64,000 nucleotides of DNA from Laetmonice hystrix (GCA_965235115.1 OZ249447.1:23994001-24058000), one strand, 5' to 3'. Positions 9,494 to 64,000 are shown, counted from the first letter of the stretch. Notes: generated by a model from the letters alone, not told the origin. Made by a program: numbers and translations.

Positions 9494-10716
9494 GATGAGC
9501 TTCTGGATTGTGTGGTCAAGAATTACTTGACCGTTGACTGATAAAATACTTCACATCTCAGGTAATGGTATGTGTGCTCTCCACACCTCACGTCCTGTCT
9601 TCAAATTAGCACCTGCACAAAAATAAGAACATGGTTACGTCATTTTCTATACCTTTTCATTTAAAAATAACATCAAGTAAGCTCAAATGCAAAGGTGTCA
9701 AAAGAGACTCGATTTTTGACTGACTTTATTTATCGATGCATCCAGTGATAAGATGTATCCACCAGCTTTGGGAGCCATTTCTTTTAAAAAAATGTGCTTC
9801 CAATGGAATAAATCGATGGTCAAAGAATGCTAATATTTTTCCCTCCAAAACTGCAAAACTATGAATGACAAACCTACAACTAGTGTTAGTGTTGTAATTT
9901 GTATTTTCAGTTTGTGAAGTAAAGCAACTGCCCCCAAGTTGGCAGGTGTGGTCTGCCAGGCAGGAGGCATGAACTCTCTTAACTGGACACATGTCATTAC
10001 ATAATGGGGGGGGGGGGGAGGGGTTACCGACTTGGCCAAAAATAAATACTGACTTTTGCCACCTGAGGGCCATGGTCTGTAGGCCGAGGATATCCATCTG
10101 GGAAGAGAAGCCCCTGCACTTCAGTCTATATCTCACACTACTATCTCCCCCTCCCCCAGACCCCCGCACACAAAAACAGCTGTCTCCATGTGTGGGAACA
10201 AGCAGGGCTTCAGATAATATTTTAAGGTGGGGAGTTTTTGACTCCCCCTCTTTTTTCAGGTTGCGTATTGTAGTACCCATCCTCAACAAGTATTGCGTAT
10301 TTGACTTCCAACTTTCAGCTGACCTGCATGTGTTTGCTAATGCTGGAAACAACTGAAACTGACAACTTATAGTATTTTTTAGTTGGCACCCTACTGGCAG
10401 GGTGCCAATGTGTCCAGCTGTTGGCACCCAGCTAGCGCTTGCTGACCACTGCAGACCATTAGAAGCCCCCCAACCATATTTGACGCTCAGTGCAGAAGGA
10501 CTCAGCTTATGGGAAGCTTTTATTACCTAATACTGAGGCGTTTTTGACGATAGGGTCTTCAAAATTACTGCGTATTTCCACCACTTCAGTGCATAAATAC
10601 GCAAATACGCACCTTATCTGAAGCCCTGAACAAGTGTGCCTCCCGCTTATAAAACGCAATTCCGCATGAACAATTTTTTTCCGTGGTCCCAAGTACTTTG
10701 TTTTAAACGGACTCCA

Positions 10717-11590
10717 CTGTACAGTCTTTTAGGCAGTTCCGAGAAGCGCTTTTGATATCCGCTACTGACAATCTTCAGGCATATCCTGGATATGTAAAAC
10801 GATGGTCGATCTGTCGAGCAATCATCCGTGTTTTATCCATATAAAGCTTAGAACTCGATGTCAATTCATTTGTTTGTGATTTTGGCCAGTTCCGATACAC
10901 TTCCGGTAGTTGCGAGAAACGCCATATCGTGAAAAGATGCCGGCGATCAGGGCCCGTTTCAAGATGTTATCATGCCATATTATGGGCCTGATAAACCACT
11001 ACATTATGGTAAATGAGCTTTTCTTTGTCAAACTTTTGATTTTTCATAGTAAGACAGACGAGTACGAGTACACCTACAAGCGCTGTGGATGTGGGCATCC
11101 ATCTTTGCATGTTACTTTGTATGTCACTAGATGGCGTGTAGATCTACGGTTCTACACGCCATCTAGGCATGACTTATCGCAACTACCTGAATTGCCACAC
11201 GAGCATTTATGCTGCTAATATTCTGGCACTACGTGTAAACATCATACAACTTTGCCAGTTTATTGAAGTGATATTTTCACTTCACCTTAGCAAAAAAGAA
11301 GGTTGAGCTCAGTTTGGTTTTGGAGAAATGGTGCCCCAATGTTCGAAGCTTCCGTTTTGCGTCAGCGCCCGCTAATGTGTGCCGTCCGCAACTGGATGTA
11401 ACCCGCTGTGTCACGCGAACACGGATGGCCCAAATATCGCGATTTTTTCATCAGACCCAGAAAATATGTAAGGCTTTACTACCCTGACATCAAATATGTG
11501 TCAGAATGAAATCTTTCAAAACTATGCCTGAGCGAATCTCACATTTCTCGCAACTACCTAATTCTCGGAACTGCCTAAAAGACTGTACAG
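10717..11590. mobile_element. Tc1/mariner-type MITE (about 870 bp)
   Basis: Perfect 29-bp inverted repeat CTGTACAGTCTTTTAGGCAGTTCCGAGAA (10717-10745) / TTCTCGGAACTGCCTAAAAGACTGTACAG (11562-11590), read as TA|CAGTC...GACTG|TA. Internal CGCAACTAC subterminal repeats; no transposase ORF. Confidence 0.7.
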
Positions 11591-12620
11591 ACTTTCAGGT
11601 CAGTGTGCAATCCCGAAACCACAGCCCAATCACTGCACCGTTTCCACAGATTCACTAGGCCTACACATGATGGGTTACCATGAATTTTAGTAATAACTTT
11701 AAAAGATAGTTTTTTTCCTGCTTGATTTGCAAAACTAGAACATGTAGATCTAAATATAATTCACATGTTCTACCCAATGGCAATGGCAATGCATTGAACA
11801 CCTTATGATGAGTTCACGTCGTGGCGTAATAGCATACCAAATGATCTATGCAGGTTCTAACAACAATCTCTCCCCGACAATATTCATGTTATGTTGCCCT
11901 GCCCCCGAATCCACACCCAGCATTAGCACAGCGCCCAACGAGCTCCGAAAGTCGGTCAGCAACCTGCATTTCTCCCCAAACCCACTTTGCAACCAAATAA
12001 ATAGCGAATGATCATGCTATACAACATACTTTGATTACGGAAAGAACAATAGTTTCAATTATAAGTATTTCTATACATCCATGAATAGAATAACTTTCTG
12101 CCTTATTCATTTATAAGGGAAATTTAGTACTATAAATTGCAGACAACTTACCATCTTTATTTGTCTGTCTGTGTGTCTGTGTTCAGAGTCATCCCGCAGA
12201 AAAATTATGAACCGGAGGAGGAAGACATGAAACAGCGAACACATTATGTGTATTTCCCGAAAGAGCAATAAGTAAGTTCCATTATGCGATTTAAAGTGTA
12301 TTAAGAGTCTGTTATGGAGACGTTTTACTTAAAATTGATAAAGTCTTTGAAAAGGAGGTCAAAAATCTCATTATTACATTAATCGTCAGATGGCACCACA
12401 TGTCACGTCGAATCACGCCGGGACACGGCATGTGGCTCAAAAGAAAATGTAAACTTGTCCAACTAGGGCCATATCGACTGGTTACTTGCCTGTGCATCTC
12501 ATGTTTTATTTATACATTTCTCAGAAATATCTGCGAGTAGACTATTATACTTCAGGTCCTGGGGCTAAGCGATTTTTGCAGTCAAGCGTACGACTTTCCG
12601 ATGACACGTCCGCCCAACTC

Positions 12621-12643: not shown

Positions 12644-33204
<20,561 letters not shown>

Positions 33205-37506: not shown

Positions 37507-38782
37507 ATGGCCTGCCTCTGCTGCCTAGAAAAATGCCTCCCACTCGAAGAGGAGAATATCAAGGAAGACCCTTTAGTTGACCTTGAGAAAGCAATCCTCA
37601 AGGTCGCCTGGGACTGCCTCTTGGCCGATCCCCCTGAACAACTTTCCTGGCGGGAACGACTGTGCCCCTTACGTAAAGTCCTCCGGCTAGAAGTAGATAA
37701 ATCATTCCTTGGGTTCGAGCCAAAAGAAATGAAGCTCTTTCCCCAGAACGCCGATCTTCCGGCTACGACGGCGGGACAGACGACTGTGCTCTTTAAAAGC
37801 CATTACCGTAACGACACGGATTCCGTGCAGCACTACTCGTTCAAGACGGAGCGAACGACCAAGTCGTCGGTGGAACTGTCCCTGCAGCGAGGGTTTACCG
37901 TCGGACAGACGCTCGAGGTCGACCTCAAGATACCCAGCGGGGTGCCCGGCTGTGACGTCTCCGGCAAGCTGGGCGGACAGCTCCAGTGGTCATTCCAGCG
38001 TGGCAAGGTTTGCCAAGTTTTAACCTGGACACAAGTGGAAGCGAGGCGGGGGGGGGGGGGTGTTAAAACAAACTATTTATTTACACTCTGCATTATTTAA
38101 GTGTAATAACAGACATATTGACCTATATTTACTTATATATAGATCTATATGTATAATTCTGCAAGTCATCAAGAAAGAGCTCTAACTAAGTCTAACTAGC
38201 CTAGAAAGAGCCAATTAAAGTTAAATCACGTGAAAAGACGCCTTTTCTATCAAAAAGACCCTATCGATTTGCTAATAACCTGGTCCCCCACATGATCTAC
38301 ATTGTCATTCAAATACATTGTAGCCTGTATTTGCTATTGCCGTCTAGATCACCCGCCAGGAGGACCAGGTCATGTGGTCTGTGGACAACCAGGTGGCGGT
38401 AGCCCCCGGGAAGACGGGCGAGGCCCGCCTCAAGGTGAGGGAGTGCCGATGGAAGGCCGACTTCAAGCTGCCGTGTACCATCCGCCCCCGGACCGACGAC
38501 CACAAGATTCCGGTGTTTGTTCGGCGCCGCCGCTCGGGTGACCTTGTCAAGGTCTTTGACGTCTCGTGCTATGACGTAGTGGCGGAATGCGGAGACCACA
38601 TCCGATTGGACGAGCACGACGACGGCGCCATCACGTGTGATCTGCAGGGGGTATGTCACGTGGTGTGCGCCGTAGAACAGGAGGTGTGGTTGCGGGAGGC
38701 CACTCTGCTGCCTCCAGAGGCGGCTATCGAACCACCTATCGTCATCCCTGTGGATGGCCTGGTCAAGGACAAAGGCTCTTAA
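37507..38782 (+). CDS. Aerolysin/ETX-MTX2-like beta-pore-forming protein, paralog 1 (311 aa)
   Basis: Exons 37507-38007 and 38348-38782 (phase 0). Motifs: LFKSHYRNDTDSVQHYSFKTERTTKSS, an alternating amphipathic hairpin GFTVGQTLEVDLKIP...GGQLQWSF, and WSVDNQVAVAPGKT. A 5'UTR acceptor lies at 37434/37435. Confidence 0.75.
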
Positions 38783-43997: not shown

Positions 43998-44440
43998 TTT
44001 ACTATTACAATACTCATCAAGGCAATGGATAATGGAGTGATTCTTTAAGTTAAAAGAAAGCTACAGGAAAAGTACCAAACATGGAGGAATCTGCATGTCC
44101 TGTGGGTAACAAACTTCCATCTATAAGATGGCCGTCAGAGACAGATTGGTTTCGGGGTTAGGCCTATAGGCAAGGCAGTCGCGGGACCGCACTCTTGCCC
44201 TCAGGGCATGGTTTCGAGGTGTAGCGGGGCACACATGCCGCTCCAACACTAATACTCACCTGCCACTTAAACTAGTAAATGAGGCATGTCTCATCTTCGG
44301 CACGTCTCATCTTCGGCATATAGTCTGCAGGTCTGCACTGTATACTATACATAGGAATTTACCGTTTTCTGTTTTGCCTTAATTTGTTATTAAATCAGTG
44401 CATCTTTTCGTTTTTAGGTACAATAGACTGTAGCATCAAC

Positions 44441-45978
44441 ATGGCTTGCTTCTCCTGCCTAGAGAAATGTTTACGGCCTCTAGATGTTGATCTCCGTGAA
44501 GATCCCATGGTTGACCTGGAGAAGGCGATCCGCACGGCGGCCTGGGAAATCCTGGACGCTGACCCCCCTAAAGCCCTAACATGGCGGGAACGGCTGAGCC
44601 GTAAACGTGGTATTCTCCGACTGGAGGTTGACAGATCCTACTTCTCAGTGGAACAATCAGGTGAGATGGAATTCCCTCCGGACCACCGCACGAAACCCGC
44701 CAACGGAACGACACCAGCACCACAAACTCTTCATAATGGAGACCCCGCAAATATTACCATTGATCAGACAGAAGAGACGGAACTACTTCCACAACAAGCC
44801 GAACTCCCTGATGCGCAGGTAACCGAGGAGACTGTAAGTCGTAAATTCGCTGACGTGGTGAAGGTGGTAGGAGGGCCGACCATACTATTCCAAAGCCGTT
44901 ACAAGAATGACACAGATTCCGTACAGCACTACTCGTTTAGGACAGAACGTTCAACCAAGTCATCCGTTCAGATATCACTTCAAAAAGGATTTACCTTGGG
45001 AGAAACACTGGAGCTTACCTTGGCTACACCTGACCTGAACCTGGGAAAGCTTGGAGGAGAATTGAAGTGGAGCTTCCAGCGGGGCAAGGTAGGAGATGAA
45101 CCCAAACTCTGACAAAAACATGTGTTTATAATATGTCACATTGTCGCTTGAAAATAACAAACGGCTACACCTGTTATATATAAATACATGTGGTATTATA
45201 ACAATCCCCATCAGCTCCGGCGTTCGTTCCTCTCAGAACGAACGCCGGGGCTGTTCGTATTGGCTCCCGATCTCCCACCCCCTACACAATTACCCGTTAA
45301 TTAATCCTGAATGCTAAAAATCAACCCTCGAGTGCCAAAGTATACAGCACATGTTCGAAGTTCCGCGGCTGCTCTTGCTTTGTGCGGACTTTTTTTTTTT
45401 TTTGGGGGGGGGGGGGGAGTCCTATTGGATCTGCCGCTGTGTCCTCCCCCCAACCTATAAGACGGGTTGTGATATTAGGGTTAATCGCTGGCTGTCTTAT
45501 TTAGGCCTATAATTTGTGATATAATGTTTATTTTATATCTTTTTGTCACTCATGTATTATTTCACTGCCCCTCCAGGTGACGACTCGCGAGGACAACGTC
45601 ACGTGGTCTGTCGACAACCAGATAGCCGTTCAGAAAAACAAGACAGGTGAAGCTTTTCTCCAAGTCACCGAGCGCCGCTGGCAGAACGAGTTCACTGTGC
45701 CCTGTACCGTCCGCCCCCGCACGTCTGACCACACCTTCCCTGTGTTCGTTCGCCGGAAGAAGTCCGGAGATCTAGTGAAAGTCGTCCATGTTACCTGTTC
45801 GAGCGTTGCCCAAAAATGCGGCGACCACATCAAAGCGAATGCAGCAGACGACATGATCACGTGTAAAGTTCGCGGGTTTGTCCGCGTGGTGTCAGCAGTG
45901 GAGCAGGAGGTACGCCTCAAGGAGGCCAACATGGTGCCCCCCGAGACGACACCTAGCGAGAGCGAGCGGCACCAGTGA
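44441..45978 (+). CDS. Aerolysin/ETX-MTX2-like beta-pore-forming protein, paralog 2 (349 aa)
   Basis: Exons 44441-45088 and 45577-45978, with the same phase-0 intron after FQRGK as paralog 1. It shares NDTDSVQHYSF.TER.TKSSV, WSVDNQ and VFVRR..SGDLVKV. A 5'UTR acceptor lies at 44417/44418 and a candidate non-coding exon ends at 42393 (CCG|GTAAGT). Confidence 0.75.
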
Positions 45979-50103: not shown

Positions 50104-53100
50104 TCAGTGACACCGTAGTACGTGTACTACAAATAATAACACAGTCAGGAGGAGCAAAGATGAAAAGTTCCGGCAGCTCCCGCAATGTGTGGCGTCCTCC
50201 TGTACGAATACACAACGAACGTATGAGAGCAGGACGAGGGGAACTTATACAATCGCAAATAAATGACCCAACACAAACAAACATTTCACAGCCAACGAGA
50301 TGACATACATGATTTACCGAGGCATAGAAAGAATAATAATCTTAATAGTCCAAGCATTCATACGAGAGTTGATACAATTTCGACAATTTGAACGATTAGA
50401 TCTAAATATCATGGAGAACAACTTGTGACCCCACAATACTTATTCGTCCTCATATAAGACTCGATCTTCATGCAAAGATAGGGGGTTTGTACATTTATAT
50501 GCTATTATCTGTTTTATTTATCCATTATATTTTCAAGATGGCTCCCATGTTGTTAAGAATTCGCCCTCTAACCTCGATGTGATACGAGTGACACTCGTCA
50601 GGCCTCTTTCTGTAGATGTCTTGCTGTAGACGTTGACACGTCATAGTGTCGTTATGTAGGCAATGTCAAGGTCAAAAATCAACAATCAAAAACAGATCAT
50701 TTTTACAGATCGAGCATCACAAACAGGGGCTGTACAATAATATCCTCATTTAATAAACAGTAGACTAAAACTCAACATAGAAAACACTTGATCTAAAATG
50801 GTCACCCTCTCAAAAATGGCTCTCAATATGGGCCTGTCATACCCACTCGTAATAAGATCACTAACACGGGAGAAAAACACGCCCGTTTTCAAACCCAGAC
50901 AGATGTGGCCATGTGGCTGTGATCTAAAGGATATATTCAATCTTCTTTGGTTCTACCACTATGGGCGGGTCCATGATGCAGTAGCATTGGGCGTCAACGG
51001 CTAGCAACATGAGGTTGGTTCGCTCCACGCGATGGATGGAATAGGACCTGTAACATTGACGTGTAGCCACAATAACGACGTTATGTACGAGCGCCTGGTA
51101 CATAACAATATCACTGCCTGGTATATGTAACAAACACAATAGTTTCTACCCTTTCAGCAAACCGGAATATACATGGCCAAACTGTCCAACGTAAACCAGT
51201 GCCGCTTTTACAGACATCACGTCAGTTATATTTTTTGTTACTGACTCCGGTGGGCTCAGGGTATACTTATGAAATCTTAAATATTAGCATGTTTTCTTCA
51301 CATCTATGAAGCCGAAAGTCACCACCACTGAAGACAAGTGACTCTACAGGTGTGATTAATCTGTGCCTTGTGTGAATCAATAAACGGCTTAAACTCAATA
51401 TGCACCGACTTTGGGTTCACAATCCTTAACGCAATGTGTATACATAAACTGTGCATGGCATTATGAAACATTTAAAAATAAAGCTTGCCACACCATATAC
51501 ATCAAACAGCTCAGGATGATAACATAATATAGCAGATCCAGAATATATTGATCTATTATCGACCGTTATGACAAACATCCCGGAAACCCATCAAACAGGC
51601 AAGTTGCAATTACCGCAACAAGGAGCTACTATAATTGTGATGAAAATGGGCACACCGCCACAACATCCTTACTGTTTTGGTCATATGATGAGTGGTTTCT
51701 ACTTTCATCCGGAGATCTCCAATCAAGTATTAAAGGAATACTTCGGCACCCTTTTACTTAAAATCTTGATCAAACATAACCAGTACACAAGCCTAGTTGT
51801 AAAGTTAATGCACACTACAATCTTGACATGTTTTCTTCAGCTGATGTCATTTAAGACGGTGTTTTTAGTAATATCTAAACCGTTCTACCATCCATCGTCA
51901 ATGAAGCGTCACAGCAGCGTCACTGTGACCATTTCCACCCACAAATTCCCATCAGAATAAATGTCACTAATGAAATTTACGATCAAGCTAATGTCGATAT
52001 ATAACAACCCATCTTTGTTGATGCTAAATGCATACTGCTGTCTAACAATAACAGGCCAAAGACAAACTGCATAACTGTCTACGTGATCAAATTAATTCTG
52101 CAACGCTGCAGCATATGAACGTCTAATGTTACTGAGTGCTTGGGTGCAAGGTGTCGTCCTTAGCAAATAATCAACAAGCTTTGGCCTACTCAACTGGTTG
52201 TATATTTTTATGATTTTTCAACTAACGAGTGGACTGGTAGACTGCCATACAATCTATGACTGTATGTGGGCCTAGCACGGTGATCCGCCATGAAAATCAC
52301 ACCCGTCACATTCATCCTTATGTGTAACGGATATCATAAAGCCATTCCTTAATGAATTATTCTGACACTAGGTGTCTCTGTCTGTCGGTGTGATGTTAAA
52401 AGAAAGCAGAGCGTGTCACCGTGCTGGTAGAGGTGGTATTCAGTGTAATAACTCGTTTTCAGTGATGGTGCAAAAATTGTCAAATTTCAACAGCTGCTTT
52501 TCTAGCATACATACTAACTGCTCAGACAGAAGGTTTTACCTGGTGGTGGCATTTGGTACTACAATGTTTCAAGTCTCCCTCAGCAGGGGGCCTAAATACC
52601 GGCGTCAAATGTGACATTCAATGAAACAAGGCCGTGCGATCTTAAAATTCCGAAAGGTTGTTTTATACGTCAATGCCACGTCAAGTAAAATACAAACGTC
52701 GAACAAAAGTCATCAAAAATTTCCCCAAATCTACAACATGGAATGTTCATCACAACTGTAACTACGGATGTTCACACAGAGAGCATGTAACACGATTAAC
52801 AGGATTATCGCAGAGCGATTATTAACTGTCCACTTACGAACTGTAATCCCCTATCCAAAATAGTAAATGAACACTCTTTATAAAATCCTGGGCGCCATGA
52901 CACTGAGGACATTTTGCCTGTTGTTCCAAGAATTCTATGTTCGGATGGCAGAAGCAAACGATGTATCCTAATTAAGGCGCTTGCAATTTTTGGGCGATGT
53001 CTCACTATCTTACGAACTAAATTACTGTTCGAACGACACTTTTGGCATCTGATCGCACTTTTTATCCGAATTTGCGAGCGATATGATTGAACAACGGTCA

Positions 53101-56100
53101 CTGCTGGTTGGGTTCCTTCCACGGAGAGCGTACAAGTATAGTGAAGCTATTGTATAGGCGTGCAACAGCCACACACTCACATTTTAAACGAAATCTCTTG
53201 GAAAAGGGGGACCATAGTCACAATATTCTATTCATTATTTGGTATACCGGTAATACTTCTATATCGTTGTAAAATACTTGATGAGGAAATTTTTGATTTT
53301 TCTTTGAGAGTATTTTTTTCTCTTTGAAACAGATACTAGTAGTTCACACAAAAGGGGCAATGCCTTGATGTAGAGGCACGGGCCACTGGAGTGAGCGCTG
53401 GGGAAGCTTGGCAGTGGTAGATTCACGCACTTTGCCTTCATCACGTACTTTCCCAACCGGAACTTATACAAAATGACGTCACAGTAAACAGTAAACGTTC
53501 AGCCCGCCACTTACTGCAATGATTATAACAGGTCCCTGGCGACTCTAACAGACTGACTGTATTATACAATAATAATACATGGACAGCCAACGAGCACCAA
53601 TGGCTATCAGGATACTCGGATGCCAAATACACTGCTGTCACAAAGGCTCCCATCCATCTCAACAAAAGCTTTTAAACCAAAAACACTGGGATTCGTCCAA
53701 GCTTGTCCAAACCAACCAGGGCTGATGCCAGTACACATTCTCGTCTATTATAACCATATCTAAGTTGATAATCTTGGCAGCTTTGGTCTCTCTGTGTACC
53801 CTGGGACCATGCATACTTATCTGTTACTGCCGAGTTTCCACAACCATACGTTGTTGTATAGCTGAATACCAAAATACATAATTGAGGCCCAAGACAGGTT
53901 ATTGGCTGAGTGACTTCAAGTGTAAGATAGGGTTGTTTATAACAAAGCCAGAGTGATACGTCGGATATCACCAGGTTATACCATGAAGTTGTGGGCCCCA
54001 TGTCACGAGTGCAAGATCCGCTCCAGTTTGACCAATCGTACAACGCCGTGACAAGGATCGCCATGTCTTAATACGCCAGCACTCACACAACTTACTATAA
54101 ACAGTTTGTGAGAGCATTGCACTGGCCATTACGATGTAGGCCTATAATTAATTGTTATACAGAACTACAGCGCTGGAATATTACACTTTCGCAAGCTGGT
54201 TTCAATATCAAGCAGGTTGCTTCCTTTGCCCTAAAGGGCCTACATAATGAAAAAGGAAAAAGCAACCGGTTCAGTATTAATAAATCGGAGGGCCCAACGG
54301 TCGTTTTCCCGCTAAAACAGCTCGTGACGCCCAACCCCGGAGAATGGATTCCACCTTACTGTTTCTACAACGGTATCTGACGTCATCCTTCTATCTCAAT
54401 GGACACAGACTGTTTTCAATACAAAGGCGTTGCTGTGGATTCTAAGGTGCATACCAGCCACACACCACCACAGATTATTATACCAAAACTAATACTTATA
54501 AAAACGCCAACTCTACATTAACTACTTACCTTGTGCACCAACCACATTTGAGTATAGTATCAAACTGTGGCAAAGAATCAAAGTCGACTAAAAACAATGG
54601 GAACTCCTTTGTGCACGACTCATGACCAATAAGCCGAGGGCCATACTGCTTCTTGAGCGTGCCGTACCACTCCATGACCTCCTCGCGGTTGGTGTAGTCC
54701 ACCCGACTACCGAATAATTCATCTTTCCATTGAAACACCTGCTCCTCGTTACCGAAATTGCGCAGTTCGGTCAAAATCCGACCTATCAAATCTTCCATGT
54801 CATCTATGTTCTGAAACTCGTCGCCACCTGTGTTTGCTGACGACAGAAACAAGCACCAAGGGTTTACACGTCATTCGTGCTGTTATAGAAGTGCCGCGGC
54901 GACTGCCCAACGGGCCGTCCGCAATACTGACTGACATCATAGTGAGTAGTAATTGCTACAGCATGCAGGTAGAGCAGTTGGTGTACTATGCACACCTCCC
55001 TGCGCAAGGAAGCAGACGTTTTGCATGGTTGCCTTATCTCCAAATTTTGTTCGAAAGGAAATCTATTGACATACAAGGACACACCAAACATTCCAAGCCA
55101 AGGTCAACACGAACTGGGGCCGATGAATAATTAACCCGCGCAAATAGCCATAATTAGCGCAAATAATTTTTACATTTGGATGTTCTTATGAAGCTCTGAT
55201 CACTAAATGTATCGGTACTCAAGCGGCCAAACATATTATACAGTTATAGGTTTATACGTTATGCGTTTTTCCGCCGAAGGTCGGCAGCACAGCAAACTTA
55301 AAGCTCAACTTTTTAAACAAAAATTACCAGGACAGATATCTCCACCACCTCACTTCAAACATGTTGATTCTGATATTTCGTTTTGTTTTCGCATTGTAAA
55401 ATTTAAAGGGCAGCTTTTAGGAGGGGTTTGAAGGTTGGTGGAGGTATAGCTTTGACAGCGGAGGGGAACATACGGACACCACTGAGCAGAGAAAACACTT
55501 ATATACATCCATACGGTGTGCATGGTCTTCATCTAGACTCTATCTTTCCGTATCTGTATTGTTGTGTCACCCCGTGTAGAAATAAGTGAACCAAAGTTAT
55601 AAACCGAAATGAACATGTCAGAGGTAAAACAGGAATAGTGAGGAAGTCAACTTGTGAAAGAAAATTTAAATAACGAAGGTGTTAACGAAAGGTAAATGAT
55701 ATGTGTTACTGTCTCATATAGTGCTTCACCCAGCCACCCTTCATTTAGTAGACTGCTACAGAACTAGCTCCTGCTCGACGACCTGCTGGCAAGGTTATAA
55801 AGATCATTCAGAGAGACAGAGCTACAAGACTGCATTCATGGAAATATCATGCAACATAAAAGTACTAAAAGTACAAACAAGGAGATTTTGGGATTAAATC
55901 AGATGAAATTAAAAGCCCAGCAGAAGGGGCTGTCCACATATTAATGGAGTTGGGCGATTGAGGTATCCGGGATTGTTGATTATGACTTTCAGACAGAGAC
56001 TGAGAGAAAAAGCAAGCCAACATCCCACAGAAACAGCCATGGAAACAGGGAGGTATACAACCATGTAGAGCTGACTCAAACATCACGGCGGGCCGGTGCT

Positions 56101-59100
56101 GACCTTCCGTCACCGCCGAAGGTCATCACGCGGAGTCGCGAAAAAAAAATTAATGTTGTGTTGGTGATAAGGCAAGATGCAGATACTGCAATACTATATG
56201 ATGTCAGGTTTATCAGATCGTGGAGGCCCCCGTGGTTTGGTTGAACATGATGGGAGGTAAGAGACGGGTATGAGTGTTGTGTTCTCTAGACAAGGCGCGT
56301 TATGTGATGAACGTAATGAACAATGACTGTGACGAGATGGGGGGTCAATGGTGAAGAGTGAGATGAGTGGTGATATGTAACAATGGTGTTTATGAGCTTC
56401 ACCCTGAGCCACATACTGGAAATACAATCTCCATGCTAGACACCTCAAGGAAGCAGTTTTCCAGTAGGAACTAAAACAACGGTTCATGATGATAAGCATG
56501 ATGGTGCTGCTGAAAAATGATCAGGATGTTGCAGAACATGAGCGTTTACATTCCAGTAAAAAGAGAAGCTTCGTTTAGTGAGAGGAAGAGCCGCCAGGGG
56601 GCAGCCTGTGTGCATGGATGATACTCACTTAGTTGTGTTCACACACTGGTCCTGGCACTGGATGGTTCCAGAACTCGGGAGGCCTCGCAGATCAGCCGAG
56701 AAGAGAGATAGGCTATTTATGCACTCCTCATGACCAATAATGTGCGGCCCGAACCGTTTCTTGATATTCTTAAACCACTGCTTGATGGCAGAATCTGGCT
56801 GCCTGTCCATGATCATCTCTCGCCACTCATTCACCCACATGCGGATCTGATCCTTGTTGGCAATGGGGACCAATTCGTTAAAGTCAGGCACGTATTGGTC
56901 ATAGTAGTCATCGGTAGGCTTGCCAGTACTGACTGGATCCGAGTAATAAGGCGACTCTTCGGACTGATTGCCTGTGAAGCACATACGGTAAATGATCGAG
57001 ATACGATCAACCACCACCAATGTCGGGGGCAAGGAGTCGCCCCCTAGTGGCGGCCATGAAAGTGGCGCCACACCAGCCACTTCCGAGGAATCCCACGTTG
57101 GGCACAGGATTACAAAGGGACTTGTACGGAATGAGAAATAGAAAGGGCAATGAGAGAGAGAGAGATAGAGAGAGAGAGGACATCTGGCTTAGCTATAAAA
57201 GGTTACAATGTTATACAACAGCAACCACAATACCGAGGGACTGACACGCTCCTCTTGGTTAAGGGAATATACACAATCTGAGGACGATTTTCACCATCTA
57301 CCATAATAATATTTTTCAGGTTTCCCTCCCCAAACCTTCACCACTCTACCATGGACACTTCCTTCAGCCAATTTCTTGAACATGCTTACATGAAAAGGTA
57401 TGGGATTTAGCACCCCCCCTTTTTTGCCGCTGATCTAGGATTGCTATACGTAGAGACGCCTTCCCCTACAATCCTGGATCCGCTACCATGAAAGACCATG
57501 AAGCATAACAGCAAAACTATGATATGGCCTGATCAAAATGATACTGATACTGGAACGCGAGTGTTCAGTAAAATGTGCATTGTATTTAGTACTCTCGTCA
57601 ATGTATCGTGAAGCCTGTTCTACTCTGCTGCACCATTTCTTGGTTTATCACCCTTTTATTATACGAATATGAAACCTGGATTTTAACTGCAGAGAAGTTG
57701 ACTACGTGACGGCTCGTACATGATATACTTTTGAAAACAATGATAAATGACGAAAGAGAGTAAGAGATAGGCAAGACAATGACTTTGCTAGCAGGCCTAA
57801 TGTCAGAAAGAAATCCTATCAAGAGATATTCTGCTGCCTAGGCGGTGTGGTCCTTGTGAAGGTTCCCGCCCGAATCTCCTGCCTACCCCCACCCGTACTA
57901 CACTCCCGAACGATGCCCCTTAACACTCAAGGCTAATGGCTGTAGCCTACAAGAGTGCCTCCTTAAAGGCTGCAGAAAAGCGTCTAACATCAAAGACAAC
58001 CCCCTGGATCGATCCGCAAGCAGGTGGACAATAGCGTTAATGCCTAATCCCCAAGGACAGGGGTAGAATGGCAATCAAGCTCGCTCCACAGCTCCACAAG
58101 TTTATCATGAGGATGGTACCAGCTGACGACTTTCTCCACACGTCCTCGGGTCCCTATGTTCCTCCATTGTTCGTCTAGTCTTCTCTTTTAAATTTCTTTT
58201 CGAATAATATGTTAAATGATCCTAATTGAATGAATGAGTAAGAGAGGGGAACAACACACATGGGCCTTTGATTACAATACAATGCGCATGTTACTTAAAG
58301 GAGAAAAGACCAGGCGTCAAGAGTAAAGTATGCTTATAATATAATGACAGATATGTCACGTACTTGGAGCGAACCTTTAAAGCTGAGATGCAGTGCCCGA
58401 GCGTTAGAGAAAAGATGATGGTAGGGAGACAGAAGGATGCGGATGGCGACATACAATGAGAAGGAGTCAGAGAATGACTCAGCAAGATGAAGCAGGCACT
58501 GTGCGAAGAGCAGGTATCACACTCACAGCTTCACCCTCGTACTTCATCTGCCACTCTGACTGACCGCAAGCCGCACAGCATGCACGAGATATCACAGCCG
58601 CAAAACCAGCACCAGTCTAGTCCGTACTTCAAGCCATTTCGTAAGCCACTACAGATAAAAGGACTTTACAAACTCAGGCTTTCTGGCAAAGCTAAGCCAC
58701 CTAAACGTAAAAAAGGCCATGCCAAACTCACTCTTTTTATGATATGATTAGAAAGTTGTAATTAGAGGCCAAAAGCTTTGTCCAAAATAAAATGTGCATT
58801 GATTGGACGCAGTTCGCCTGAACAATCGAACATAAAGTAATCTGTGGCAGGGGAAGATTATCTCTTATTTCACATATATATTTTGTTTTACCATCCGACC
58901 AGCTGTCCGTTGATCTGTGGTCACAGTTTTAAAGTTCATGCTGACCGCCCACGTCTGGTGTTATTTACGCATAAACTGAACAATTTGGCTGCTATCTACA
59001 GAACGCAAACAGAGCTAATGTGAAACCAAATCCACCACACATATACACACGTCTGATTGCACACCTCGCGAGATTTCTGACAATCACCTAGCAGCGCAAC

Positions 59101-62100
59101 CATATAAAGCAACATGGTACTAAATGAGAAACTCTCAGGTAGGACGAACGCTCGTCTGGTCTGCCTCTGGTCTGATGAGGTTATTGGACCACTACTATGA
59201 TATCCACGGACAGGTTCCGTATACCCTCAACATTCTGTCTGAGAATCTACCCTTTTTTTATTAGTTGAAGGAAGTGTCCAGTCTACCATCACCTCTCTCT
59301 TAGTTTTCTCCCAAAGTTCTGAATTGTAACCGAACTTACTTTGTTTTGACTCGGCTGTGTGCAGCCAGTCATCATGCCTTGTATGGATATGGTGGTGTAA
59401 GGGTTCTACACAGGCACAAAACACAAAATACATGCCTCATTGCATGCCTGATAACCAATTATCTTGTCAGCTGAGGATGCCAGGTATAGCCGTCAAGGTA
59501 GAACCAAAAGGGCACGAGGTGTATGTATACAACTCGAGGTCTATACATAGAAACACCCGTCAGGTTAACAGCCGTGATGCGGCTACAGACGACGCCATCA
59601 TCATTTCTGAAGGTAACAACTAGGAATTGGATGGCAGGAAACGGTAAGAGCCGACTGGTCGGTGCGAGGAGCAACACACCACATCCAACAATACATAGCA
59701 AGTCTACTGAGGCTTCATTGGACGGGTGGTTACAGTCACGGCACCAGACAACAAGGGTGGGTGAGGACGTGTGGTAACACATGTAGGGGGCGGGCAGAGA
59801 GACATGATCCCACACCAAACCACACCATTAAATACGGGATCCGCAGTCAGAGAGGCAAGAGTAGTGAAGGGTCTACACACATAAATACCATATGTATCAG
59901 TCAAGAATGGTTGGAAATGCCTTTTTGACACCACCCGTTGAAATCGCATACAAGAAATTAAATGGGAGCAAAACGTAAGGTATATGATTTTGGATGCAAA
60001 GGTTATGCAATCATGCAATGGATGGCGTACTGCAGTCTTTGAAATGGTGCGTAATTAAGTCAAGTCGCTATAGATAAGCTGAGGCCGTCCGTTACAAACA
60101 GGAGATAACAGACTGGCCTTGTATCCATAGAGTAAACTAACTCTGTGAGATAACTTTTGAAAGGACAAAATGTGTAACATAGCGTGACTGTTTCTGGCAC
60201 TCCTAACAGGCTTTGCTTCACCGCGAGGAAGAGAAAGAGATTACAAGCTGTAGGGATCGCTTTACATTCAGCATAATTTGTTTGTTAAGGATCGATGGAG
60301 GAATTGTTTATGATGAACAGGTGACCTGGATCTACAGTAATCAGACGGTGAATGTGAGATGGGAATGAATATATGTATAAGATGAGAGTAGAGGTTGAAA
60401 ATGAACGTGATGAACCGCATGGATGATGACGTCATGAAGGCGGGTGACGGGTAACGTGACCGGGAACCATGTATGACCAGGCGTGACCGTGTCATGACCG
60501 GGGTATTTAAATGAAACAAGATTAAACGCAGTGACGGCCTGACGCTACTGGATGCTGGAGACCCAGAGTCACCTCTAAACATGAATGATACGTCCTAGAA
60601 AATGGACGCCCCTGACTCCTAGACATGTACGTCTATGTGTATTTCAGGAAAACTGGCGGGCAGACCAAAACCTGCAGGAGTGCCTTGAGTGTCCTAAACG
60701 GTTGAGGAAGGGACAGAGATGCCATACGGTGAGCAGCAATGTAAAGCACGATGCGTAAATAAGGCATTTTAAATATGCTGCCAGCAGCGAAGATTCAGGC
60801 AGTTCGTAAGGATAAGGAAAGCTTCAGTCCATAAACAGAACGGGTGAACAGAGGTGAGAGGAAGGTATACAGTACACTGAACCAGTTTCCCCCAAATCTG
60901 GGGCGAGTCAGATTATCATAAAATGTGGGCATGAAATGACAATTTGTTGATGCCCAACAACGTGATGGGTAAATAAGGATAAATTCGTAAAGACTGAATT
61001 GTGTGTGAAACCTAGAGTACAAAAACTCAAGGATAATAAAGAGGTGTTATTGAAATAACATGCTTCTAATTCAAAAAAAGTTAAAAAGTGTTCAATATGA
61101 TGAAACTTCTCCCCACTTCTCCCCAAAGAGTGTATGTGTTGCCGTCTTTTTCAAAGTTTGTAATCCACATTGAATACAGGATACAAAGTTTTCAAGGTAC
61201 CGTTTATAAACATTCGTAATTTACTGAATCTTTTGACAAAAAGATACGTTAAAAGCTGTGGTTTTCTTATACTTTTGCTTCATTTATAGTACATATCAGA
61301 GTATAATTCTAAGCATCTATCATACTGTACCATATTACACAGATATAAATGTTATCGAAATAATTTATTACACTTACCTCTTACTGTTGTATAGTCACCA
61401 TGCCACCAGCTAAAGAAATTAAACTGCAGTAAAAACCTGAAAGTCAAACCATTATTAGAAGATTTACGACCGACCTTCAGCGAGTTACATACACCACAGG
61501 AATCCGACATAGCGGTACCAACATTAGCGGGTGGACCCCTGAAGCCCCCCCCCCCCCTCCTCCTCGATCCATTCCTGCATATACCCGTCTTATCGTAGTA
61601 TACTGGACACACTTATCACTCTAAAATAACCATTAATCCAGCATCACAGCTCATGCTTCATGTAAGTCTGTACCAACATGGAAATCAGAGCAAGGTTTGA
61701 TTTTGCAGATTTATGTTCATTCCATGTGTACTCACAGCGCTATCTCTTGGACCAGCCATGATAGTGAAGAAAATAAATGTCTCAATGGCTGAAAAAAATC
61801 ATACATTTCAGAGTCAGATAATGGATACACATACAAATCCTTTCTTAGGTTTTCAAAGGAAAAGATGAAGTAATGCATCAGCTGATGGGTTCAGCAACAC
61901 GTGCACACATCAACCATCCACAATATAAGTGCACGGAGTTTTAAGCTGAACCTTTATATAAATATAAACGTAAATCTCAGGTCATCGTTTTTGTTACAGG
62001 GAATAGTGCACGGAGTTTTAAACTGAACCTTCATATAAATATAAATGTAAATCTCAGGTCATCGTTTTTATTACAGGGAATAGTGCACGGAGTTTTAAAC

Positions 62101-63734
62101 TGAACCTTCATATAAATATAAATGTAAATCTCAGGTCATCGTTTTTGTTACAGGGAATAGTGCACGGAGTTTTAAACTGAACCTTCATATAAATATAAAT
62201 GTAAATCTCAGGTCATCGTTTTTATTACAGAGAATAGTGCACGGAGTTTTAAACTGAACCTTCATATAAATATAAAAGTAAATCTCAGGTCATCGTTTTT
62301 ATTACAGAGAATAGTGCACGGAGTTTTAAACTGAACCGTCATATACCCTCTGACCGGATACCTGTCTGGCAGCTGAGAAGGCTTTCACTGATCTGAGATA
62401 ATAATAGGTTGATACTTACATCTATAAATAGGGACCGTGCTCCTGACCCTCCTCTCACCCAGATTTCACATATTCCTTGGTAGTCGTACATTTGTATTCT
62501 ACAAATGAAGAAGAGAACATGAACTCTTACGGTAAAATACAATAAAATATTAGATCGAATTCCGCAAACATTACTCTCAATATACTATGAATATTAACAC
62601 GCTCTCCTGAAATATATCTACTGTTTATTGACAACTCATATACCGGTAAGCCAGAAATAAAGGCTGCCAAGAATGACATGGTGTTGAAGAGATAAAAGGC
62701 TGCCAAGACTTAGTCGACGTTGAAGACACCTACCTCCTAAAAACCCCTTTCTTAATGCCCATACTATCGGCCTCCTCATGTTGGATAAGTTCCTTCATTA
62801 ATGTTCCATCCAGCTCCCCAAAGAATTTACCAATCTGCAACATAGAGATTTGATGTGGACGAGATTCGTTTCAAATTCACGACAGCCGACGTATGAACGT
62901 GGCTACGTACAGTTGGCACCTCTCATTGTCTCTCTGTCATCTGGTTCAGGTTGGGCACACCGCACAGAAACGTAGCAGGTCATATTCAAATGAGCGTAAA
63001 TTGTTGTTCATGCCTGCATACACCTTATTCATTACCACTTCACATTTTCTAAATACTGTTTGCTAAAAAATCGATCTAGGACTTACCTCGCCTTGGTTCT
63101 CCGACAAAACCACAAAGCCATTGTTATCAAGGAGATAACAATCAAGCTCCTGAAGCCAAACAAATTATTGATATCACTGTTAATGAAACAACTATAGAAA
63201 GACATGTTGATTGACCTTAGTCACACCAACAAACATACAGCAAACATGTCAACATACAAAACCTGTCAACAAACATACAGCAAACATGTCAACATACAAA
63301 ATCTATCAACGCAAAATGAGCAAAACATATCACCGCAAAATGAGCCAGCTGAAACAAGCTCGCACAATTTGACTGTTGAAGTTGCCGATAAATTAATCCT
63401 CGTACACGCAGAAAATTCCCCTCTTGATCAGGTATCGACCTTAGTTATGACCGCATACATCAAAAGTCGACCAATGGCAGTGTGTTAAGACAGTATTAGA
63501 CGATAAATGCCAAGGAGTCTATGAAAGATGATTTACGTACAGCACTTTCACAAGTCATGTTACACGGAGCGTCCTTGAAGGGGCAGACTCTCGTCTGGTT
63601 GATGAAGAACTCGTAGAACTTGTCGTATCTCATCTGGAGACCGACGACGGCAGCCACCGCCTCCCGGCCCTCCTCCGAGATGATGATCGGTGAACTGGCT
63701 GTCACCACCGTCTTGTTCCACTCCGACTCATCAC
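50104..63734 (-). CDS. CACNA2D: Voltage-gated calcium channel alpha2delta subunit, 3' part (gene continues beyond the window); CACNA2D3/4-like
   Basis: Exons in frame: 63734-63541 (AAVVGLQMRYDKF...CNMTCES), 63149-63087 (ELDCYLLDNNGFVVLS), 62834-62734 (IGKFFGELDG), 62498-62420 (QMYDYQGIC), 61788-61736, 61436-61378 (FNFFSWWHGD), then 56971-56629 or 54836-54530, then 51047-50935 (TNLMLLAVDAQCYC), 50655-50573 (CQRLQQDIYRKRPDECHSYH), and 50199-50104 (EDATHCG plus a hydrophobic GPI-type tail). Confidence 0.93.
50656..50934 (-). other. U12-type (minor spliceosome) AT-AC intron, 279 bp
   Basis: Donor ATATCCTTT (50934-50926), branch CCTTGAC (50671-50665), acceptor CTAC ending at 50656. Removal restores the frame (KIEY-NDTMTC). 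Confidence 0.92.
54530..54836 (-). CDS. alpha2delta alternative exon C (alpha2/delta junction, 307 nt, phase 1 to 2)
   Basis: Acceptor TTTCTGTCGTCAG, donor AG|GTAAGT. Encodes ...WYGTLKKQYGPRLIGHESCTKEFPLF...LKCGWCTR, which resembles the delta N-terminus (PCDTEYPAF...CEDCSK). Confidence 0.8.
56629..56971 (-). CDS. alpha2delta alternative exon A (alpha2/delta junction, 343 nt, phase 1 to 2)
   Basis: Acceptor GTGCTTCACAG, donor AA|GTGAGT. Encodes ...WFKNIKKRFGPHIIGHEECINSLSLF...QCQDQCVNTTK, paralogous to exon C. Confidence 0.8.
57640..58060 (+). mobile_element. Highly degraded RTE-like LINE 3' remnant
   Basis: Short peptides LLLYEYETWILTAEKL (compare LLYGSETWTLT) and RWTIALMPNPQG; broken by stops. 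Confidence 0.3.
59340..59405 (-). CDS. Candidate 66-nt symmetric (phase 1-1) cassette exon of alpha2delta
   Basis: Strong pyrimidine tract TATTTTGTGTTTTGTGCCTGTGTAG and donor A|GTAAGT; reads EPLHHHIHTRHDDWLHTAESKQ in frame. Confidence 0.5.
61928..62337. repeat. 77-bp minisatellite, about 5.3 copies, in an alpha2delta intron
   Basis: AGTGCACGGAGTTTTAAACTGAACC... recurs at 61928, 62005, 62082, 62159, 62236 and 62313. Confidence 0.95.
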
Positions 63735-63891
63735 CTACAACAATGGACAACACTGGCGTCAACTGTAACTTCACCTACAGCAATGGACAACACTGCCGTC
63801 AACTGTAACTTCACCTACAGCAATGGACAACACTGGCGTCAACTTTAACTTCACCTACAGCAATGGACAACACTGGCGTCAACTGTAACTT
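63732..63891. repeat. 40-bp tandem repeat, 4 copies, overlapping an alpha2delta splice acceptor
   Basis: Unit CACCTACAGCAATGGACAACACTGGCGTCAACTGTAACTT at 63732, 63772, 63812 and 63852. Confidence 0.92.
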
Positions 63892-64000
63892 CTCTGTGTA
63901 AACTGGTCTGTCTACCTCACCACGACTCGTTATATAAACTGGGCTGTTTCTACCCCGCCACTGTTCGTATATAAACCTTTGTAAAAATGAATATTGCAAG

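What the first reader, a model, noticed from the sequence alone, without database searches (positions are those of the whole stretch)
54530..56971. Duplicated, apparently mutually exclusive exons that swap the alpha2/delta junction of a Ca-channel alpha2delta subunit
Seen: two paralogous exons (343 and 307 nt) lie in the 10-kb interval between the WWHGD exon and the TNL exon. Both enter in phase 1 and exit in phase 2, and share W..E...W(F/Y)...KK.(F/Y)GP..IGHE.C...(F/L).LF..D...LP...TI..C..C. Either alone restores the frame; joining both directly frameshifts to a stop. Established: this segment contains the alpha2/delta proteolytic site and the delta cysteines that link delta to alpha2. Inference: the gene encodes two isoforms with different, roughly 70-residue helical inserts at the junction (much longer than the vertebrate linker). 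These could differ in maturation, trafficking or synaptic partners. I do not recall this exon-switch cassette being described.
Basis: partly seen in the sequence, partly recalled or inferred. Interest (0 to 1): 0.78.

Follow-up and report, generated by a model that had tools for sequence, protein, structure and literature searches.

The report
Two swappable exons in alpha2delta
A worm-like invertebrate's calcium-channel helper gene (alpha2delta) holds two old, selectively kept versions of the exon spanning the alpha2/delta junction, only one of which fits in an mRNA, so it very probably makes two protein forms, though no RNA data could show this.

Summary
On the minus strand, exon A (56971-56629) and exon B (54836 or 54827-54530) are paralogs: 32% amino-acid identity, E 6e-16. 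They share phases and have good splice sites.

A alone or B alone keeps the frame. Including both, or neither, gives early stop codons.

Both exons are real and old:
- Four other species carry the same tandem array between the same constant exons, and two of them also carry a third copy, C.
- Between species synonymous sites are saturated (pS 0.64-0.83), while pN is 0.12-0.15 for B and 0.34-0.37 for A.
- About 100 database exon sequences split into an A clade and a B clade.

New here: the A-B intron holds two unique, mutually complementary elements (a 19-25 bp duplex) in all four species with DNA. Further conserved islands lie downstream of B.

AlphaFold models give a confident helical module in both versions. 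B keeps the vertebrate-like CGxC(S/T)R ending.

No RNA run exists for this organism, so mutually exclusive use is inferred, not shown. I found no paper describing it. This scan has noted other such clusters in this genome, including another pair in this same gene.

The parts
61378..61436 (-). Upstream constant exon (59 nt). Encodes ..FLLQFNFFSWWHGDYTTVR and ends in phase 1.
   Evidence: Sequence. Frame. Homologous to P0086 ..FSVFHWW...
56629..56971 (-). Alternative exon A (343 nt, 113 full codons, enters in phase 1 and leaves in phase 2). It has two N-glycosylation sequons (NQS, NTT) and cysteines at C83, C105 and C109, with a CxxxC ending.
   Evidence: Orthologs: P0001 (78% identity), L004 1016-1340, L007 7369-7711, L011 11261-11609. 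Between species pN is 0.34-0.37 against pS 0.71-0.83. AlphaFold gives helices at 30-33, 39-54 and 59-73, mean pLDDT 82.
56160..56182 (-). Intronic element E1 (CTGCATCTTGCCTTATCACCAAC), about 450 nt downstream of the exon A donor. It is one arm of a conserved long-range RNA duplex.
   Evidence: It matches the A-B intron of L004 (21 of 22 bases), L007 (15 exact bases) and L011 (17 exact bases), although the introns otherwise do not align. Its 19-mer occurs once in the own genome. It is the best partner of E2 in all four species.
55021..55044 (-). Intronic element E2 (TTTGGAGATAAGGCAACCATGCAA), about 200 nt upstream of the exon B acceptor. It is the other arm of the duplex.
   Evidence: Present at L004 3000-3021, L007 9769-9790 and L011 13353-13373. 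The duplex has 19-25 bp and -24.5 to -27.7 kcal/mol. The core is invariant; the distal helix differs in L011 but still pairs.
54530..54836 (-). Alternative exon B (307 nt, or 298 nt from the orthologous acceptor at 54827; enters in phase 1 and leaves in phase 2). It has an acidic N-terminus and no N-glycosylation sequon. Cysteines are C74, C97 and C100, with the vertebrate-like CGWCTR ending.
   Evidence: Orthologs: P0104 (92% identity), L004 3406-3700, L007 9975-10269, L011 13588-13897. Between species pN is 0.12-0.15 against pS 0.64-0.74. AlphaFold gives helices at 13-27, 30-41 and 50-64, mean pLDDT 83.
53813..53866 (-). Conserved intronic island G, about 700 nt downstream of exon B. It ends ..ACAGATAAGTAT and holds a small hairpin.
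   Evidence: A 62-nt stretch is 87% identical between L004 4401-4462 and L007 10828-10889, and part of it is kept in the window. The hairpin reads ACAUCC/GGAUGU in the relatives and ACAAC/GUUGU here, a change on both sides of one pair.
53282..53297 (-). Conserved intronic element F1 (ATCAAAAATTTCCTCA), complementary to F2.
   Evidence: Inverted repeat I6. Identical 16-mer at L007 11161-11176. F1/F2 duplex is -21.8 kcal/mol.
52710..52727 (-). Conserved intronic element F2 (TGGGGAAATTTTTGATGA), complementary to F1.
   Evidence: Identical 18-mer at L007 11668-11685.
52455..52472 (-). Conserved intronic element H (TGCACCATCACTGAAAAC). It is complementary to the conserved 3' end of exon B (GUGGYUGGUGC).
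   Evidence: Identical at L004 5314-5331, and 15 exact bases at L007 12007-12021. The duplex with the exon B donor region is -18 to -23 kcal/mol, which is not above chance by energy alone.
50935..51047 (-). Downstream constant exon (113 nt), entered in phase 2. Encodes SYSIHRVERTNLMLLAVDAQCYCIMDPPIVVEPKKIE.
   Evidence: Aligns to rabbit alpha2delta-1 [25 protein letters not shown] through P0086. Orthologs start at L004 ~6291 and L007 ~13226 and lie at L011 14631-14681.

Best explanation
Exons A and B are a cluster of tandem-duplicated, mutually exclusive exons in an invertebrate alpha2delta gene.

The cluster is old. Relatives carry the same A-B pair, and some carry a third copy, C, upstream. 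Every copy enters in phase 1 and leaves in phase 2, and each has a length of 1 mod 3. Only single inclusion gives an open frame. Double inclusion or skipping gives early stop codons, which nonsense-mediated decay would probably remove.

The gene therefore makes two alpha2delta isoforms that differ only in a segment of 100-113 residues. That segment comprises a flexible linker after the hydrophobic WW stretch, a helical module, the conserved YGPxxxGxExC motif and the first three cysteines of delta. By position it should hold the alpha2/delta cleavage site.

- B is the slowly evolving, ancestral-like version. It has three helices, an acidic linker and a CGWC(S/T)R ending as in vertebrates and in the paralogous gene.
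- A evolves about three times faster. It lacks the first helix, has a longer Pro/Tyr-rich linker with N-glycosylation sequons, and has a different cysteine spacing.

Exon choice is probably steered by conserved long-range RNA pairings. One is the E1-E2 duplex inside the A-B intron. F1-F2 and H lie in the intron after B.

Shown here: the anatomy, the frames, the orthology, the selection on both copies, and the conserved complementary elements.

Inferred: actual alternative use, the role of the RNA duplexes, and any difference in maturation or function between the isoforms.
For: - Paralogy: E 6e-16.
- Splice sites and phases.
- Frames.
- Orthologous tandem arrays flanked by the same constant exons:
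  - relative 1: P0001 and P0104 are about 2 kb apart on one 369,521-bp contig;
  - relative 2: L004 and L005;
  - relative 3: L007, with C, A and B;
  - relative 4: L011, with C, A and B.
  - L017 holds two A-clade exons 600 nt apart.
- Purifying selection on both copies, with saturated synonymous sites. The exons are almost the only alignable DNA between species.
- 99 representative exon sequences split 51 A-type to 48 B-type. The tree has an A clade of 50 rows (support 90) and a B clade of 45 rows (support 93).
- Spliced mRNA-derived alpha2delta proteins from other lineages carry exactly one copy of the segment, between WW.. and SYS..TNLMLL.
- The conserved E1/E2 duplex is present in four species. 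E1 is unique in the genome and there is no Rfam match.
- Further conserved intronic islands.
- Confident helical models for both exons.
Against: - There is no RNA evidence for this organism. Only three DNA runs hold the stretch.
- No spliced sequence with an A-clade or B-clade exon turned up in the protein collections.
- E1 and E2 lie in the same intron and pair with each other. No competing third partner was found, so they do not fit the classical docking/selector logic and their effect on exon choice is unknown.
- A evolves much faster than B, so A could be a minor or tissue-restricted form.
Confidence: 0.8

Rival explanations
1. Only one exon, most likely B, is ever spliced in. The other is a dead or dying duplicate.
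For: B is far better conserved than A: 71-92% against 43-78% identity to the orthologs. B carries the vertebrate-like ending. The paralogous gene has only a B-type exon. No RNA shows A in use.
Against: A is intact, with conserved cag|GC acceptor and AA|gtgagt donor, in four other species. Its pN is 0.34-0.37 where pS is 0.71-0.83. The flanking intron does not align at all. A-type exons form a deep clade of about 50 representative sequences. A dead exon would have decayed like the intron around it.
Confidence: 0.06
2. Both exons are included together. The frame is restored by the 68-nt segment 54999-54932 or by another small linking exon, giving a protein with two copies of the module.
For: A + the 68-nt segment + B reads open. 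The segment has a cag|G acceptor and a gtcagt donor.
Against: Neither the 68-nt segment nor its peptide is found in the A-B intron of L004 or L007. Relatives with three copies would need two such linkers. mRNA-derived relatives and the vertebrate proteins have one copy only. Doubling the cysteine set would probably disturb the disulfide pattern.
Confidence: 0.03
3. The exons are alternative but not strictly exclusive. Double-inclusion or skipped mRNAs are made on purpose as unproductive, decay-targeted forms that tune alpha2delta dosage. The conserved E1-E2 duplex, which brings the exon A donor near the exon B acceptor, would promote that A-B join.
For: E1-E2 lies entirely inside the A-B intron and would shorten the effective intron to about 650 nt. 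A+B and skip-both forms carry early stops.
Against: This does not explain why both protein versions are kept under selection. It could act alongside the main explanation and need not replace it. No RNA data bear on it.
Confidence: 0.1

Closest known systems
Tandem-duplicated mutually exclusive exons of ion-channel genes, for example the two exon pairs of Drosophila Cav2/cacophony (PMC11828482) and the human tandem exon duplication events (PMC5740500, PMC9741552)
   Same: The exons are adjacent and homologous, with the same phase. One is used per mRNA and both are conserved over long times. They swap a defined structural module of a channel protein.
   Different: The gene here is the auxiliary alpha2delta subunit, not a pore subunit. 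The module spans the alpha2/delta junction. Use of the exons is inferred, not shown. I found no paper that links alpha2delta with such a cluster.
Competing RNA pairings that control mutually exclusive splicing: Dscam, 14-3-3, and the bidirectional model for srp (PMC4691838)
   Same: Short intronic elements are conserved in otherwise unalignable introns. They are complementary over about 20 bp and lie between and after the alternative exons. In srp, too, two of the four elements lie between the two exons.
   Different: In srp the two inner elements each pair with an outer docking site and so loop out one exon. Here the two inner elements pair with each other, and no competing partner was found. 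The logic therefore differs or is incomplete.
Proteolytic maturation of vertebrate alpha2delta at LEA//VEM (PMC5092059, PMC9016415)
   Same: The cassette covers the stretch that, by position, holds the cleavage site in alpha2delta-1. From my recollection of the rabbit sequence, that site is about 16 residues before the first delta cysteine.
   Different: The exon has no LEA/VEM-like sequence. The invertebrate stretch is about 75 residues longer: 160 unaligned residues against 86. It is predicted to be helical. Cleavage of this protein is untested.
A second candidate alternative exon pair in the same gene, in the dCache_1 region (scan note s1-344595, about 20 kb beyond the window)
   Same: Same gene, same kind of tandem exon pair, and likewise without RNA data.
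   Different: It affects the ligand pocket, not the junction. I did not examine it here.

Membership tests
Voltage-gated calcium channel alpha2delta subunit | C-terminal VGCC_alpha2 region and delta part that are collinear with known alpha2delta proteins | tested here: met
   The window exons match P0117 residues 746-1072 in order. P0117 carries PF08399, PF00092, PF02743 and PF08473. P0086, matched in order by the window exons over its residues 262-612, aligns to rabbit alpha2delta-1 565-889 and 975-1077. One window exon gives a weak PF08473 hit, E 0.035.
Voltage-gated calcium channel alpha2delta subunit | N-terminal VWA domain with a MIDAS motif, and Cache domains | not tested
   These exons lie beyond the window's end. 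Another scan note (s1-344595) describes the dCache_1 region of the same gene.
Voltage-gated calcium channel alpha2delta subunit | Cleavage into disulfide-linked alpha2 and delta | not testable with these tools
   Only positional homology is available. The conserved cysteines of the cassette align to the first delta cysteines of rabbit alpha2delta-1.
Mutually exclusive exon cluster from tandem exon duplication | Adjacent homologous exons of similar length with identical phases and usable splice sites | tested here: met
Mutually exclusive exon cluster from tandem exon duplication | The frame is kept only when exactly one exon is included | tested here: met
   A only and B only are open; A+B and skip-both give early stops.
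Mutually exclusive exon cluster from tandem exon duplication | Each copy is kept by selection in other species | tested here: met
   Orthologous arrays in four other species. pN is well below the saturated pS for both copies.
Mutually exclusive exon cluster from tandem exon duplication | mRNAs contain one or the other exon, never both | not testable with these tools
   No RNA run exists for this organism. Spliced relatives from other lineages hold one copy, but they come from species for which no array was seen.
Docking-site/selector competing RNA structures | Conserved complementary intronic elements at the cluster | tested here: met
   E1/E2 in four species and F1/F2 in two.
Docking-site/selector competing RNA structures | One docking site that can pair with two or more selectors, one per exon | tested here: not met
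   E1 and E2 are each other's best partner in all four species. The next-best duplexes are weaker and lie at different, non-corresponding positions in each species.

The most novel reading that the evidence does not exclude
The cassette could be a splice-controlled switch of alpha2delta maturation. In this reading the A, B and (in relatives) C versions present different linkers and cleavage contexts at the alpha2/delta junction. One gene would then yield forms that are cleaved, and so activate the channel, at different rates or places. In vertebrates the uncleaved form holds channels latent (PMC5092059). The choice would be set by a long-range RNA duplex whose logic differs from the known docking/selector schemes.
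Probability: 0.15. Interest if true: 0.8.

Novelty: new member of a known kind. Interest (0 to 1): 0.6.

Why it matters
Alpha2delta subunits set the surface density and activation of CaV1 and CaV2 channels, and they organise synapses. In vertebrates, their cleavage into alpha2 and delta is a checkpoint that releases latent channels.

An old exon switch that is kept in many invertebrates and replaces exactly the junction segment would be a natural experiment. It bears on what the linker, the helical module and the first delta cysteines contribute to the protein's function.

It also offers a small two-exon system, with short conserved complementary elements, for studying how RNA pairing steers exon choice outside arthropods.

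Tried and rejected
- RNA evidence. The look-up of sequencing runs gave only three DNA-type runs from one sample, so I did not use read laying.
- Spliced A or B forms in the protein collections. The exon B search found only genomic open frames. P0089 found only itself. The P0086 region search found one full-length mRNA cluster, P0117, whose 12 members show no variation in the segment. A motif scan of all fetched proteins found spliced forms only in the intermediate 'D' group.
- Metagenome scan. It returned three short genomic contigs with a B-type exon only. An alignment of both exon types was too diverse for that tool.
- Third copy in this window. None was found with the family profile or with the L007 C exon.
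- The 68-nt linker exon. It is not conserved.
- Inverted repeats by the generic tool. It gave seven pairs, of which only I6 (F1/F2) proved to be conserved.
- A competing third partner for E1 or E2. None is conserved.
- E1 or H pairing with the exon B donor region. The energies are not above those of shuffled controls.
- E1 as a transposon end. Rejected: it has one copy in the genome.
- Known RNA families. None matched.
- Fold search of the exon A model against the PDB. No significant match.
- Profile search of A/B against PDB sequences. Only chance hits.
- Naming the organism. 'Annelid-like' comes from other notes of this scan and was not tested here.
Full report
**Anatomy**

The gene runs on the minus strand. 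The window holds its C-terminal third.
- P0086 (a 648-aa partial alpha2delta from a metatranscriptome) and P0117 (a full-length 1133-aa mRNA-derived alpha2delta) match the window exon by exon.
- The matches run from about 63717 down to 50579.
- P0117 carries VWA_N, VWA, dCache_1 and VGCC_alpha2.
- P0086 aligns to rabbit alpha2delta-1 at 565-889 and 975-1077.

Between the small constant exon 61436-61378 and the constant exon 51047-50935 lie 10.3 kb holding two paralogous exons.

| Exon | Coordinates | Length | Acceptor | Donor |
|---|---|---|---|---|
| A | 56971-56629 | 343 nt | cacag\|G | AA\|gtgagt |
| B | 54836-54530 | 307 nt | gtcag\|C | AAG\|gtaagt |

- A second in-frame acceptor for B lies at 54828|54827. 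It is the one that lines up with the relatives' cag|GTGACGAG.

**Frames**
- A alone and B alone read through into the next exons.
- A+B stops 9 or 12 codons after the A-B junction, depending on which B acceptor is used.
- Skipping both stops after 15 codons.
- A + the 68-nt segment 54999-54932 + B is open. However, neither that segment nor its peptide is found in the A-B intron of the relatives.

**Is either exon dead? No.**

A profile of A and B, searched against 1.8 billion representative proteins, gave about 99 true hits.
- Nearly all are open frames over genomic exons.
- They split 51 to 48 into an A type (ending C..K) and a B type (ending CGWC.R).
- A tree gives an A clade of 50 rows (support 90), a B clade of 45 rows (support 93), and a small intermediate group.

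The array itself is orthologous in four other species, flanked by the same constant exons.

| Species | Source | Exons found |
|---|---|---|
| Relative 1 | one 369,521-bp contig | P0001 (78% to A) and P0104 (92% to B), about 2 kb apart, same strand |
| Relative 2 | L004 | A 1016-1340, B 3406-3700 |
| Relative 3 | L007 | C to 6451, A 7369-7711, B 9975-10269 |
| Relative 4 | L011 (more distant) | C 10254-10608, A 11261-11609, B 13588-13897 |

A fifth contig, L017, has two A-clade exons 600 nt apart.

Selection between these species:
- Synonymous sites are saturated: pS 0.64-0.83.
- pN is 0.12-0.15 for B and 0.34-0.37 for A.
- Apart from two short matches, the exons are the only DNA that aligns.

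Both copies are therefore under purifying selection, B more tightly than A.
- The window has no third copy.
- The own genome has one further match: a B-type exon in a paralogous alpha2delta gene at C13:13.13-13.145 Mb. That gene has no A-type exon.

**What the segment is**

Through P0086, the last ~30 residues align to rabbit alpha2delta-1 975-1003 (SCITEQ..CGNCSR). The next exon aligns to [14 protein letters not shown]..CPC.
- The cassette therefore holds the first three delta cysteines.
- B keeps the CGxC(S/T)R ending. A has CQDQC..K.
- The vertebrate cleavage site is LEA//VEM (PMC5092059). From my recollection of the rabbit sequence it lies about 16 residues before that first cysteine.
- By position, then, the site would fall inside the cassette, near the conserved KK.(F/Y)GP stretch.
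- The region between the last Cache-type block and that cysteine is 160 residues in P0086 against 86 in rabbit.

AlphaFold models, built with about 100 aligned exon sequences:

| Exon | Helices | Mean pLDDT | Ends |
|---|---|---|---|
| A | 30-33, 39-54, 59-73 | 82 | N-terminal part less confident (block means 66-71) |
| B | 13-27, 30-41, 50-64 | 83 | first residues low |

- A has two N-glycosylation sequons. B has none and is strongly acidic at its start.
- The cysteine I recall as forming the C404-C1047 bridge would align to CQRLQQ in the constant exon 50655-50573, not to the cassette. This is from memory and was not verified.

E1 and E2, in the A-B intron:
- E1 (56182-56160) and E2 (55044-55021) recur in the A-B intron of L004, L007 and L011.
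- They are complementary. The duplex has 19-25 bp and -24.5 to -27.7 kcal/mol.
- The cores UUGCCUUAUC/GAUAAGGCAA and UGCAU/AUGCA are almost unchanged in all four species. The distal helix has different letters in L011 but still pairs.
- Each is the other's best partner in all four species.
- The E1 19-mer is unique in the 627-Mb genome, so it is not a transposon end. No Rfam family matches.

In the intron after B:
- F1 (53297-53282) and F2 (52727-52710) form a second complementary pair, identical in L007.
- Element H (52472-52455) is kept in L004 and L007. It can pair with the conserved 3' end of exon B.
- Island G (about 53866-53813) holds a hairpin that keeps pairing through a change on both sides.

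Energies alone do not exceed shuffled controls. The weight lies in conservation, reciprocity and position.

The arrangement recalls the conserved elements of srp and Dscam (PMC4691838). It differs in that E1 and E2 pair with each other inside one intron, and I found no competing partner. What the duplex does to exon choice is therefore open.

**What is missing**
- No RNA run holds this stretch.
- I found no spliced sequence with an A- or B-clade exon.
- The mRNA-derived proteins that I did find (P0086, P0089, the P0117 cluster) belong to the intermediate group. They carry one copy of the segment with no isoform variation.
Other notes of this scan call it annelid-like; I did not test that.

**Literature**

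Two full-text searches that joined alpha2delta or CACNA2D with mutually exclusive or tandem-duplicated exons found no description of such a cassette.

**Verdict**
- The reading as a mutually exclusive pair is very likely right, at about 0.8.
- The functional consequence, whether for maturation, trafficking or partners, remains a hypothesis.
- It is a new member of a well-known kind of splicing device, in a gene where it matters.
- This genome seems rich in such clusters, including another in this same gene (s1-344595).

Noticed in passing
window 50656-50934 (minus strand): The intron after the TNL exon looks like a U12-type AT-AC intron. The donor is GAAT|ATATCCTTT, a branch-site-like ccttgac lies 9 nt before the end, and the acceptor is ..cctac|ATAACG. 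It keeps the frame into the exon 50655-50573 (YNDTMTCQRLQQ..). The ATATCCTT donor is conserved in L004, L006 and L007 but not in L011.
   Followed up: partly
L007 about 6100-6451; L011 10254-10608: Relatives carry a third paralogous exon (C type, ending ..C.KK|gtgagt) upstream of A. It groups with five database sequences inside the A clade. It is absent from this window.
   Followed up: yes
own genome G000:C13:13130300-13145500 (plus strand; L012-L014, L003): A second, compact alpha2delta gene lies 11 Mb away on the same chromosome-scale contig. It has a single B-type junction exon (..ATCGWCSR) and no A-type copy.
   Followed up: partly
window 63731-63999 (minus strand): Open frames repeat ..KLQLTPVLSI.. 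just upstream of an alpha2delta exon. This fits the 40-bp minisatellite at a splice acceptor noted by another reader (s1-344642).
   Followed up: no
window 14011-20056 (plus strand): A BEL/Pao-type LTR retrotransposon with long open gag-like (DUF1759) and pol (Peptidase_A17, integrase, DUF5641) frames.
   Followed up: partly
window 37507-38782 and 44384-45978 (plus strand): Two paralogous two-exon genes begin MACLCCLEKC.. and ..MACFSCLEKC.. They have no Pfam match. Another reader noted them as pore-former-like (s1-306561).
   Followed up: no
window 1351-5154 and 7205-9493 (minus strand): Two very long single open frames (1267 and 762 aa) have C2H2 zinc-finger-like motifs and low-complexity acidic, basic or polyglutamine tracts. 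The second has no Pfam match at E 0.001.
   Followed up: no
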